A stretch of 63,186 nucleotides of DNA, counting the filler, from Octopus bimaculoides (taxonomy: Eukaryota): NCBI RefSeq assembly GCF_001194135.2. It is 5 parts of 4 records of this genome, joined end to end, with 100 filler letters (N's around TTAATTAATTAA, not from the genome) between each part and the next. Parts side by side here need not be neighbours in the genome. Positions count along the whole stretch, not along the records: positions 47,777 to 55,601 come from NC_068988.1; 4 more parts are not named here. One strand, written 5' to 3'. Numbering within the stretch: position 1 is the first letter of the stretch; every line of letters begins with the position of its first letter. Position numbers and translations under genes: made by a program. Of this stretch, positions 49,484-50,506 are shown in pieces. The notes under the pieces are model-generated. The model made no database searches, was not told where the DNA came from, and saw nothing but the letters and a program-made list of their open reading frames with translations.

Positions 49484-50506
49484 TGAATTATGCAATTTTA
49501 TTCCTTTTCTAAGAACATATATAGTTAAAATTCCATCCAAGTACGTTAACATTCCTACATAAGCGTCATCTATGTGTAGTGCAAGATTGTTGATGTAACC
49601 AAAGATAAGGCAGCAGCTTGCAATAATGAAGGAAAGTACAAAATATCCAAAATAATCTTGGAACAAATCATTCGTCAAATCCAGTAGAGTACAGAGTTCT
49701 TGAAAATTATCGAAAAGCACGGTAAGTTCTTTACCTGTGTTCTCATCAGGTATGCTTTTGTTTTCAGTGTTATTTATTATTCCACTAATTAGCAAATTGA
49801 ATTCAGTTTCTAAAGTGTTTATAACGAAGTAGTGAATCGGTAATAATGTGAACATAGGTATAAGTTTTATGGTGCTTATTATAAAGTGAAATGTTAAGCT
49901 AATATCGCCAAATACACTGGTTCGAGACACGGGGTATATGAAGACATCCATAAATGTATTACTATCTTTGGTGCAAAATGGTAAAAGAAATTCAGTAATA
50001 AAGACAATTCCAAAGAAATGGAAAATATAAATATATTTGTAGATTTTCTCGATAAAACCTTTTTCAGATTTAAATTTCAGATTATATTCAATACATTTAA
50101 TATTGGTTATTTTATTCAAAATTTTTATATTTTTGTCGGCATTGAATGCAACACTAAGCCGTATAAATATTGCTACGAATTGGTGAAAAGCTATATAGAC
50201 CTTGATATAGTATGCAGTTTTATTTTTGGTAAAATCCAATCCGATGTATAAGTAGATTTTAACAAATTCTGCTAACATATATATTTCTAGAACGCGACAA
50301 ATTATGTAAAAACATTTTCTCTTTAAATTATATGATTTCCAAAGAGATAAAGACATTTTCATATTTATAAGCTGGTGAAACCTTATTAAAAACTGAATAG
50401 AATCGTGTGTGTTTTGGGGATAACCCACTTCTTTCTGGCTATTTGCCTTCTGTGAAATGGAAGATGGATGTACGTTGTGGCTGTTTAAAGAATATACTGT
50501 AAACAT
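49484..50506 (-). CDS. Probable gustatory receptor-like (GRL/7TMIC) protein, large first coding exon; downstream exon(s) not located
   Basis: 341 stop-free codons in very AT-rich DNA with about six hydrophobic segments. GRL-like pattern INTLETEFNLL...FQELCTLLDLTNDLF...IASCCLIF...GIKLHNS, ending at a perfect phase-0 donor TCA|GTAAGT. Confidence 0.65.

What the first reader, a model, noticed from the sequence alone, without database searches (positions are those of the whole stretch)
49484..50506. Probable gustatory-receptor-like (7TMIC) chemoreceptor in an apparent octopus genome
A long intact multi-pass ORF shows the GRL pattern (L..EF, then LC.L...ND.F, then C..F, then G..LH) and a phase-0 intron near the C-terminus, as is typical of GR/GRL genes. 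Cephalopod chemosensation is mostly discussed through nAChR-derived chemotactile receptors and GPCRs, so an intact, divergent GRL would point to a separate ion-channel chemosensory route. The TM7 exon(s) with the TYxxxxxQF motif were not found and may lie in gaps; a pseudogene cannot be excluded.
Basis: partly seen in the sequence, partly recalled or inferred. Interest (0 to 1): 0.7.

Follow-up and report, generated by a model that had tools for sequence, protein, structure and literature searches.

The report
Octopus gustatory-receptor-like gene, first exon
This is the large first coding exon of a gene from the insect-type gustatory-receptor (seven-helix ion channel) family in an octopus-like genome; the call is correct, but octopus members of the family are already in public databases, so it is an unannotated new member and not a new kind of receptor.

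Summary
On the minus strand, 49484-50506 is a 341-codon open exon. It runs from a conserved ATG to a canonical phase-0 GTAAGT donor, and is far longer than chance allows (358 stop-free codons; the best of 500 shuffles was 179). It has no direct Pfam or PDB sequence hit. A full HMMER scan of 1.84 billion proteins found only seven relatives. One of them is Octopus bimaculoides A0A0L8FL56, named 'Gustatory receptor', which passes Pfam 7tm_7 (35 bits; cut-off 26.6) and carries the TM7 motif TYVIVVLQ. A profile-profile comparison links the window's subgroup to that protein's subgroup at 99% probability. An AlphaFold model (pLDDT 65) best matches insect OR and GR cryo-EM structures (TM 0.45-0.60). 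The exon holds six helices with the charge pattern of an intracellular N-terminus. The GT donor sits at the same codon in four relatives. TM7 is not in the piece: only 1.7 kb of intron is available, with transposon relics and a gap. So whether the gene is intact cannot be told. The likely ortholog in another octopod dataset is a pseudogene. Verdict: a real, divergent, unannotated octopod GRL gene, a new member of a known family, of modest interest.

The parts
49484..50506 (-). First and largest coding exon of a gustatory-receptor-like (GRL/7TMIC) gene. It has 341 codons, from the ATG to the last codon before the intron, and encodes the N-terminus and TM1-TM6.
   Evidence: ORF. Significance against shuffles. 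Homologs. hhalign 99% to the 7tm_7-positive octopus GR group. Fold match to insect OR/GR structures.
50504..50506 (-). Start codon ATG. An in-frame TGA lies 11 codons upstream at 50537-50539. A possible acceptor ...ttgcag| ends at 50513 and could join an untranslated 5' exon.
   Evidence: Sequence read. Paralogs P0002 and P0003 start at the aligned position with a similar N-terminus: MSEIVTIKS and MTDIFTIRS against MFTVYSLNS.
49478..49483 (-). 5' splice donor GTAAGT, in phase 0, directly after codon 341 (TCA, Ser).
   Evidence: The same position carries GTAAGT or GTATGT in L001, L002, L007 and L008. O. bimaculoides protein P0007 continues with downstream-exon sequence at this point.
50234..50326 (-). 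Predicted helix TM1 (aa 61-91), preceded by the basic stretch WKSYNLKRK.
   Evidence: AF2 secondary structure, hydropathy, charge count.
50144..50221 (-). Predicted helix TM2 (aa 96-121). The short TM1-TM2 loop carries an N-glycosylation sequon, NKT, at aa 95.
49970..50062 (-). Predicted helix TM3 (aa 149-179).
49763..49915 (-). Predicted long helix TM4 (aa 198-248). The membrane part is about aa 198-224. The rest extends out of the membrane, by inference into the cytoplasm. It contains the conserved E-F (aa 235-236).
49592..49744 (-). Predicted long helix TM5 (aa 255-305). The membrane-external part (by inference cytoplasmic) carries the family-conserved FQELCTLLDLTNDLFQ (aa 268-283, window 49658-49705). 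The membrane part is about aa 283-305 and holds the conserved C..(F/Y)G.
   Evidence: F268, L274, N279, Q283 and G303 are invariant in A2.
49487..49573 (-). Predicted helix TM6 (aa 312-340), ending in the conserved basic RKGIKLH just before the intron.
47777..49477 (-). The first 1.7 kb of the intron after the exon, up to the edge of the piece. No TM7 exon is detectable. It contains a 74-N gap (48982-49055) and transposon relics.

Best explanation
The window holds the first and largest coding exon of a gene of the gustatory receptor / gustatory-receptor-like family (Pfam 7tm_7; the 7TMIC superfamily of seven-transmembrane ion channels), in the genome of an octopod cephalopod.

Shown here:
- The exon encodes an N-terminus with the charge pattern of a cytoplasmic end, and six helices. 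TM4, TM5 and TM6 are unusually long.
- It ends at a family-conserved phase-0 intron just after TM6.
- The remaining exons, about 75-80 codons in the O. bimaculoides relative and including the pore-lining TM7, lie beyond the 1.7 kb of intron available in this piece.

Inferred from solved insect GR and OR structures, not shown here: the full protein would assemble as a tetramer, with or without other subunits. The long TM4-TM6 extensions together with TM7a would form the cytoplasmic anchor domain. TM7b would line a central cation pore, and a pocket within the TM1-TM6 bundle would bind the ligand, so that ligand binding gates the channel directly.

The gene belongs to a small, fast-evolving clade so far seen only in octopod-type data. 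The searched collection holds at least five other lineages, and the likely ortholog in another species has decayed into a pseudogene. This is the birth-and-death pattern typical of chemoreceptor families. A chemosensory role is the most likely function but is only inferred.
For: 1. The ORF is real and intact. It has 358 stop-free codons, against a maximum of 179 in 500 shuffles and 124 elsewhere in the piece.
2. Homologs: phmmer against 1.84 billion representatives gave 7 hits. They include P0002 and P0003 (E about 1e-16, full length), P0005 (4e-6) and P0007 (2.5e-4).
3. P0007 is UniRef A0A0L8FL56, 'Gustatory receptor', Octopus bimaculoides. It hits Pfam 7tm_7 at 35 bits, above the cut-off of 26.6, over model positions 156-366 of 370, and it carries TYVIVVLQ in TM7. 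Paralog P0002 independently gives a sub-threshold hit to 7tm_6, the insect OR family (E 0.002).
4. hhalign of the query subgroup (A2) against the P0007 subgroup (A3): probability 99.0%, E 5.3e-18, 285 aligned columns.
5. The AF2 model built on the 8-sequence alignment has pLDDT 65 and pTM 0.53. Its best Foldseek PDB matches are MhOR5, ApOR5, AaegOR10, DmGr43a, AgamOR28 and BmGr9. For these, the query-normalised TM-score is 0.45-0.60 and probability 0.8-1.0. Every hit from another fold has TM 0.25 or less.
6. Topology: there are six hydrophobic helices. K+R counts are 16 in the predicted inside loops and 3 in the outside loops, which fits the N-terminus-inside orientation of 7TMICs, the opposite of GPCRs.
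7. A GT donor follows the homologous codon in the window and in four relatives. The spliced O. bimaculoides protein continues there.
8. The start codon and N-terminal sequence are conserved with P0002 and P0003.
Against: - The window protein has no direct hit to Pfam 7tm_7 or 7tm_6 at E up to 10.
- Neither the protein nor its profile hits any solved GR or OR by sequence.
- Membership therefore rests on a transitive chain and on a medium-confidence model. The Foldseek E-values are weak (0.005 to 1).
- TM7 and its motif, the single most diagnostic feature, are not in the piece. Completeness and function of the gene are unknown.
- dN/dS against the closest relative is 0.56, which is only weak evidence of constraint. 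That relative is itself a pseudogene, with three in-frame stops and a lost ATG.
- No expression data are available.
- GRLs outside arthropods are not always chemoreceptors. From my own knowledge, not checked here: a sea-anemone GRL has been linked to embryonic patterning, and nematode LITE-1 and GUR-3 to light sensing.
Confidence: 0.88

Rival explanations
1. It is a GRL pseudogene, or a gene remnant. Exon 1 is still open, but the TM7 exons are lost or disrupted, for example by the transposon insertions seen just downstream, so no functional channel is made.
For: No TM7 exon appears in the 1.7 kb downstream. That stretch carries RT-like and LINE-like relics and a gap. The likely ortholog in the other octopod dataset is clearly decayed: three in-frame stops and a lost ATG. 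One of those stops is polymorphic (P0008 against P0001). dN/dS is 0.56. The gene is not in the searched protein collection.
Against: 341 codons remain open in sequence that is about 70% A+T, where a stop is expected every 13 codons or so. The start codon, the donor and all family-conserved residues are intact. Introns in this family are longer than 1 kb in relatives too: no next exon appears within about 1 kb in L002. So the absence of TM7 from 1.7 kb says little. Transposon relics inside introns are normal.
Confidence: 0.3
2. It is a multi-pass membrane protein of another family, such as a GPCR or a transporter, and the GRL-like motifs are coincidental.
For: There is no direct Pfam hit. Profile hits to PDB are only noise-level matches to nAChR transmembrane segments at E above 1.
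Against: hhalign gives 99% to the 7tm_7-positive group. The top structural matches are all insect ORs and GRs, while the GPCRs, ABC transporters and BAR domains on the list have TM 0.25 or less. The charge pattern indicates an N-terminus inside the cell, the opposite of GPCRs. The conserved intron coincides with the splice point of a 7tm_7 protein.
Confidence: 0.03
3. It is a chance ORF, or a transposon-derived ORF, in A+T-rich repeat-laden DNA.
For: The piece is rich in transposon relics and microsatellites.
Against: The ORF is twice as long as the best of 500 shuffles. It has full-length homologs in single copy per contig, with a conserved start and a conserved splice donor. There is no transposon domain. 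No other copy lies in the piece.
Confidence: 0.01

Closest known systems
Octopus bimaculoides A0A0L8FL56, named 'Gustatory receptor' in UniProt (P0007), and its relative P0005 from the Logan runs (74% identical)
   Same: Same family. phmmer E is 2.5e-4 and 4.4e-6 against a 1.84-billion-protein library, and hhalign gives 99%. They share the conserved EF, ELCxLLxxTN..Q, C.L.YG and RG(I/M)KLH positions, and the phase-0 intron at the same codon.
   Different: Only about 20-25% identical to the window protein, so this is a different, old paralogous lineage. P0007 is a fragmentary model of 224 aa that lacks TM1-TM3 but has TM7. The window has TM1-TM6 but not TM7.
L007 (P0004 + P0001/P0008), a contig from sequencing run SRR11869385, species not identified
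   Same: The closest relative. It is 71% identical in nucleotides over the whole 1023-nt exon with almost no length change. The donor is at the same place, and some similarity (65%) continues in the upstream non-coding DNA. It is probably the ortholog in another octopod.
   Different: It is a pseudogene or a segregating null allele. It has three in-frame stops, one of which is read through in another contig, and the ATG is lost. Only 49% of the amino acids are identical, and dN/dS is 0.56.
Insect gustatory receptors (Pfam 7tm_7; solved BmGr9, DmGr43a) and odorant receptors (7tm_6; MhOR5, Orco, AaegOR10, AgamOR28)
   Same: The predicted fold matches: query-normalised TM-score is 0.45-0.60, about 315-350 aligned columns. 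Helix order is the same, with long TM4-TM6, and the charge pattern fits an N-terminus inside the cell. An intron near the 3' end is characteristic of animal GR and GRL genes (PMC7746228, citing Robertson 2015).
   Different: Sequence identity is only 12-16%. There is no direct HMM hit. TM7 is unseen. Ligand, partners and tissue are unknown.
Gustatory-receptor-like (GRL) genes of other Lophotrochozoa: molluscs such as Aplysia, and annelids such as Capitella and spionids
   Same: Same superfamily by definition. GRLs are documented across Mollusca and Annelida (PMC7746228; PMC5850775; PMC11730519).
   Different: A single-sequence HMMER scan found no gastropod, bivalve or annelid GRL at E of 0.001 or better. 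This octopod clade is therefore strongly divergent from them. I could not run the profile search needed to place it among them.
Cephalopod chemotactile receptors (CRs, derived from nAChRs)
   Same: Both are, or would be, ionotropic receptors that could serve contact chemosensation in cephalopods (PMC11526382).
   Different: The fold and family are unrelated: pentameric Cys-loop channels against a tetrameric 7TMIC. The only nAChR similarity seen here was noise in transmembrane segments (E above 1).

Membership tests
GR/GRL family (Pfam 7tm_7; 7TMIC superfamily) | Direct match of the protein to the family HMM (7tm_7, 7tm_6 or Trehalose_recp) above the gathering score | tested here: not met
   hmmscan of the 341-aa exon product found no 7tm_7 or 7tm_6 hit even at E up to 10. 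The most conserved part of the model, TM7, is absent from the query, and divergent GRLs commonly miss this HMM.
GR/GRL family (Pfam 7tm_7; 7TMIC superfamily) | Significant homology to proteins that are themselves established members (a transitive or profile link) | tested here: met
   phmmer E is 2.5e-4 to P0007 and 4.4e-6 to its relative P0005, in a 1.84-billion-protein library. P0007 hits 7tm_7 at 35 bits, above the gathering score of 26.6, and is named 'Gustatory receptor' in UniProt. hhalign of A2 against A3 gives 99.0%, E 5e-18.
GR/GRL family (Pfam 7tm_7; 7TMIC superfamily) | Seven transmembrane helices with an intracellular N-terminus (inverted relative to GPCRs) | tested here: inconclusive
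   Six helices are present in the exon. K+R is 16 in the predicted inside loops and 3 outside, which supports N-terminus-inside. The seventh helix lies outside the piece.
GR/GRL family (Pfam 7tm_7; 7TMIC superfamily) | TM7 motif TYhhhhhQF | not testable with these tools
   The exon that would carry it is not in 47777-49483 or anywhere else in the piece. The piece ends 1.7 kb into the intron. The related P0007 has TYVIVVLQ.
GR/GRL family (Pfam 7tm_7; 7TMIC superfamily) | [quoted passage not shown] | tested here: met
   A phase-0 GTAAGT donor follows TM6. GTAAGT or GTATGT sits at the same codon in L001, L002, L007 and L008, and this is the splice point of the P0007 protein. I could not test whether this intron matches one of the ancestral GR introns described by Robertson 2015 (cited in PMC7746228).
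GR/GRL family (Pfam 7tm_7; 7TMIC superfamily) | Fold of the OR/GR subunit: TM1-TM6 bundle with long TM4-TM6 forming the cytoplasmic anchor | tested here: met
   The AF2 model has pLDDT 65 and pTM 0.53. Its top Foldseek PDB hits are all insect ORs and GRs, with TMq 0.45-0.60 and probability up to 1.00. Hits from other folds have TM 0.25 or less. The model is of medium confidence and comes from a shallow alignment of 8 sequences.
GR/GRL family (Pfam 7tm_7; 7TMIC superfamily) | Forms a tetrameric ligand-gated cation channel | not testable with these tools
   This needs expression, electrophysiology and structure work. It is inferred only from solved insect GRs and ORs.

The most novel reading that the evidence does not exclude
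This gene and its five or so sister lineages form an octopod-specific, strongly divergent GRL clade that is expressed in suckers, lips or the olfactory organ. There it would work as ligand-gated channels, a third class of cephalopod chemoreceptor beside the nAChR-derived chemotactile receptors and the GPCRs. I found no paper on this in the searchable literature.
Probability: 0.15. Interest if true: 0.6.

Novelty: new member of a known kind. Interest (0 to 1): 0.3.

Why it matters
GRLs are known across molluscs, and an octopus 7tm_7 protein already carries the name 'Gustatory receptor' in UniProt. The existence of the family in octopus is therefore not new.

Three things are modestly useful:
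- This copy appears to be unannotated. No identical product is on record.
- It belongs to a small clade so divergent that the Pfam model misses it. Repertoire counts based on 7tm_7 hits alone would undercount cephalopod GRLs.
- The clade shows chemoreceptor-style turnover, with an intact exon here and a decayed, partly polymorphic ortholog elsewhere.

I found no paper that discusses cephalopod GRLs. A targeted survey of expression in suckers, lips and the olfactory organ, followed by heterologous expression, would show whether octopuses use a 7TMIC route in addition to chemotactile receptors.

Tried and rejected
- Direct Pfam scan and PDB sequence search of the exon product: nothing.
- Word-indexed homolog search: nothing with the single sequence. 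With the profile A1 it returned only P0005, even though other members of the query alignment are in the collection. This is a limit of the index, not biology.
- Profile A1 against PDB sequences: only noise-level nAChR transmembrane matches at E above 1. P0007 alone against PDB: noise.
- Single-sequence AlphaFold: pLDDT 37, unusable. The run with the 8-sequence alignment replaced it.
- Search for the TM7 exon: three-frame reading of 47777-49483 (-), a [TS][YF]x5Q motif scan in all six frames, and tblastn with the P0007 C-terminus at E up to 100. Nothing credible.
- Search for the next exon in relatives: about 1 kb downstream in L002 holds none either.
- Search for further GRL copies in the piece by tblastn with all relatives: none.
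- Exact look-ups of the window's product and of P0007 in the contig collection: not on record. I could not obtain O. bimaculoides genomic DNA to read the downstream exon structure.
- Identifying the species behind runs SRR11869384-94 from the literature: no paper cites them.
- Literature on cephalopod GRLs: six searches and several papers read. None deals with them. The Albertin 2015, van Giesen 2020 and Kang 2023 papers are not held.
- tRNA, Rfam and tandem-repeat scans of the piece: nothing related to the gene.
- Rejected explanations: chance ORF, transposon ORF, and GPCR or other family (see the rival explanations).

Full report
**What is in the sequence.** The piece (47777-55601) is about 35% G+C. 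It has three runs of N, microsatellites and transposon relics. On the minus strand one ORF stands out at 49460..50518. The first ATG is at 50506, and an in-frame TGA lies 11 codons upstream. The frame runs for 341 codons to ...RKGIKLHNS. The last codon ends at 49484, and GTAAGT follows at once, a canonical phase-0 donor. The ORF is not a chance product. It has 358 stop-free codons, against 124 for the next longest stretch in the piece and at most 179 (mean 98) in 500 shuffles. At this composition a stop is expected about every 13 codons, so 341 open codons have a probability near 1.6e-12.

**Direct family searches fail.** The exon product has no Pfam hit of any relevance at E up to 10, and no sequence hit in the PDB. 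The word-indexed protein search found nothing.

**Homologs exist and lead to the GR family.** A full HMMER scan of 1.84 billion representative proteins found seven hits.
- P0001 (58% identical) and P0004 (49%) are two pieces of one broken copy on contig L007.
- P0002 and P0003 match over their full length, with E about 1e-16 and about 23% identity.
- P0005 has E 4.4e-6, P0006 has E 9.7e-5, and P0007 has E 2.5e-4.
- P0007 is UniRef100 A0A0L8FL56, 'Gustatory receptor', Octopus bimaculoides. It is a fragmentary model that includes the C-terminus.
- P0007 matches Pfam 7tm_7 at 35 bits, above the gathering score of 26.6, over model positions 156-366 of 370. It weakly matches Trehalose_recp, and it carries TYVIVVLQ in its last helix.
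- P0002 gives an independent sub-threshold hit to the insect OR model 7tm_6 (E 0.002).
- P0005 is 74% identical to P0007.
- A profile-profile comparison of the query subgroup (window, P0008, P0002, P0003, P0010) with the P0007/P0005 subgroup gives 99.0% probability, E 5.3e-18, over 285 columns from TM1 to the exon end.

The transitive link to a bona fide 7tm_7 protein is therefore strong.

**Structure.** Folded alone, the protein gives an unusable model with pLDDT 37. With the eight-sequence alignment A1 the model reaches pLDDT 65 and pTM 0.53. Its helices are at residues 61-91, 96-121, 149-179, 198-248, 255-305 and 312-340. That is six transmembrane helices, the last three much longer than a bilayer. 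This is the hallmark of OR/GR subunits, whose TM4-TM6 extend into the cytoplasmic anchor domain (established knowledge from the Orco, MhOR5 and BmGr9 structures). Foldseek against the PDB puts the following at ranks 1-6 and further down the list: MhOR5, aphid OR5, AaegOR10, DmGr43a, AgamOR28 and BmGr9. For these the query-normalised TM-score is 0.45-0.60 and probability is 0.8-1.0. Every hit from another fold (F-BAR domains, ABC exporters, GPCRs) has TM 0.25 or less. The Foldseek E-values are weak (0.005 to 1) and the model is of medium confidence. I treat this as corroboration, not proof.

**Topology.** Lys+Arg counts are 16 in the loops predicted to face the cytoplasm: the N-terminus, TM2-3, TM4-5 and the stretch after TM6. 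They are 3 in the other loops. The short TM1-2 loop carries an NKT sequon. This fits the N-terminus-inside orientation of 7TMICs and is the opposite of GPCRs.

**The intron.** In the window and in four relatives (L001/P0005, L002/P0006, L007, L008/P0002) the codon aligned with Ser341 is followed directly by GTAAGT or GTATGT. The Logan proteins all end a few read-through residues later, with 'VS...' or 'VC...'. The spliced O. bimaculoides protein instead continues at that very point with IHDIVEDL...TYVIVVLQ. The phase-0 intron after TM6 is thus conserved across old paralogs about 20-25% identical to the window protein. Introns near the 3' end are a recognised trait of animal GR and GRL genes (PMC7746228, citing Robertson 2015). 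I could not test whether this intron matches one of the ancestral ones.

**What is missing.** Downstream of the donor only 1707 bases remain before the edge of the piece. They contain a 74-N gap, an RT-like relic and a LINE-like tail, and no TM7-like coding segment. Relatives also show no next exon within about 1 kb. Long introns are thus normal for this family, and the absence of TM7 here does not argue for a pseudogene. No second GRL copy lies in the piece.

**State of the gene and family dynamics.**
- Contig L007, from run SRR11869385, aligns to the window at 71% nucleotide identity over the whole exon with almost no length change.
- It also aligns at 65% over about 290 bases of upstream non-coding DNA, which suggests orthology between two related species.
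- That copy has three in-frame stops and has lost the ATG.
- One of the stops is read through in another contig of the same project (P0008), so null and less-damaged alleles may be segregating.
- Nei-Gojobori dN/dS between the window and L007 is 0.56, with dS 0.60 and dN 0.34. This value mixes any constraint on the window's lineage with neutral decay on the other, so it does not settle whether the window copy is functional.
- All Logan relatives come from one set of runs (SRR11869384-94). That species has at least five GRL lineages.
- The 1.84-billion-protein library yielded no gastropod, bivalve, annelid or arthropod protein at E of 0.001 or better. The clade is therefore very divergent.

**Which genome.** The only named relatives of the gene are from Octopus bimaculoides. 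So are the only named relatives of the transposon relic at 47778-48026, with up to 85-88% identity over part of its length. Together with the ortholog-like contig, this supports an octopod origin. The species cannot be named from these data.

**Mechanism.**
- Shown: family membership by transitive homology, six helices with a charge pattern that fits an inside N-terminus, the conserved splice site, and a fold match.
- Inferred from solved insect GRs and ORs: the full protein is one subunit of a tetrameric cation channel. Ligand would bind in the TM1-TM6 bundle of each subunit, and TM7b, encoded by exons not in the piece, would line the central pore.
- Inferred from family behaviour (small divergent clade, pseudogenisation): a chemosensory role.
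- Alternative roles are possible. From my own knowledge, not checked here, non-arthropod GRLs have been linked to development and to light sensing.

**Comparison with what is known, and novelty.** GRLs are documented in Mollusca and Annelida (PMC7746228, PMC5850775, PMC11730519). An octopus member is already named in UniProt. The searchable literature treats cephalopod chemosensation in terms of nAChR-derived chemotactile receptors and GPCRs (PMC11526382, PMC6408891, PMC11886862). I found no paper on cephalopod GRLs. The finding is a correct identification of an apparently unannotated, divergent member of a known family. It is not a new kind of receptor. Interest is modest (0.3). The useful practical point is that Pfam-based counts will miss this clade.

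Noticed in passing
L007:631-1653 (contig of run SRR11869385), aligned to window 49484-50506: The closest relative is an ortholog-like copy: 71% nucleotide identity, the same 1023-nt length and the same GTAAGT donor. It carries three in-frame stops and has lost the ATG. One stop is replaced by Tyr in another contig of the same project (P0008), so null alleles may be segregating in that species.
   Followed up: partly
window 50839-51128 against L007:60-342: About 290 bases of non-coding DNA some 330-620 bases upstream of the start codon are 65% identical between the window and L007. This could be a conserved promoter or 5'-UTR exon, or a shared repeat.
   Followed up: no
window 47778-48026 (-): An open 83-codon fragment, cut by the edge of the piece, has 77 homologs. 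The best unnamed hits are 75-80% identical, and the only named ones are O. bimaculoides 'uncharacterized protein' entries. It has no Pfam domain. It looks like the C-terminal part of a retrotransposon ORF lying in the GRL intron.
   Followed up: partly
window 48738-48935 (+): A short ORF (VLARASVDDIETQIHRQKLRWTGHLIR...) resembles the C-terminal tail of LINE reverse transcriptases. This rests on my recollection only; there is no Pfam hit.
   Followed up: partly
window about 52680-53160 (+): A G+C-richer stretch (about 45%) translates, with frameshifts and stops, into a mariner/Mos1-like transposase relic. It gives a weak HTH_48 hit (E 0.11, below cut-off) and has ...HDNTPCH... and ...SPGLAPAD... 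motifs. It is probably a decayed, internally deleted mariner element.
   Followed up: partly
window 52336-52419, 55271-55321, and the edges of the N runs (48982-49055, 51273-52162, 53832-54181): Microsatellites (AC)13, (AT)29 and (TTA)17 are present. Every assembly gap is flanked by (TA)n, seen as 'IYIYIY' in translation, which suggests the gaps are unresolved AT-dinucleotide repeats.
   Followed up: no
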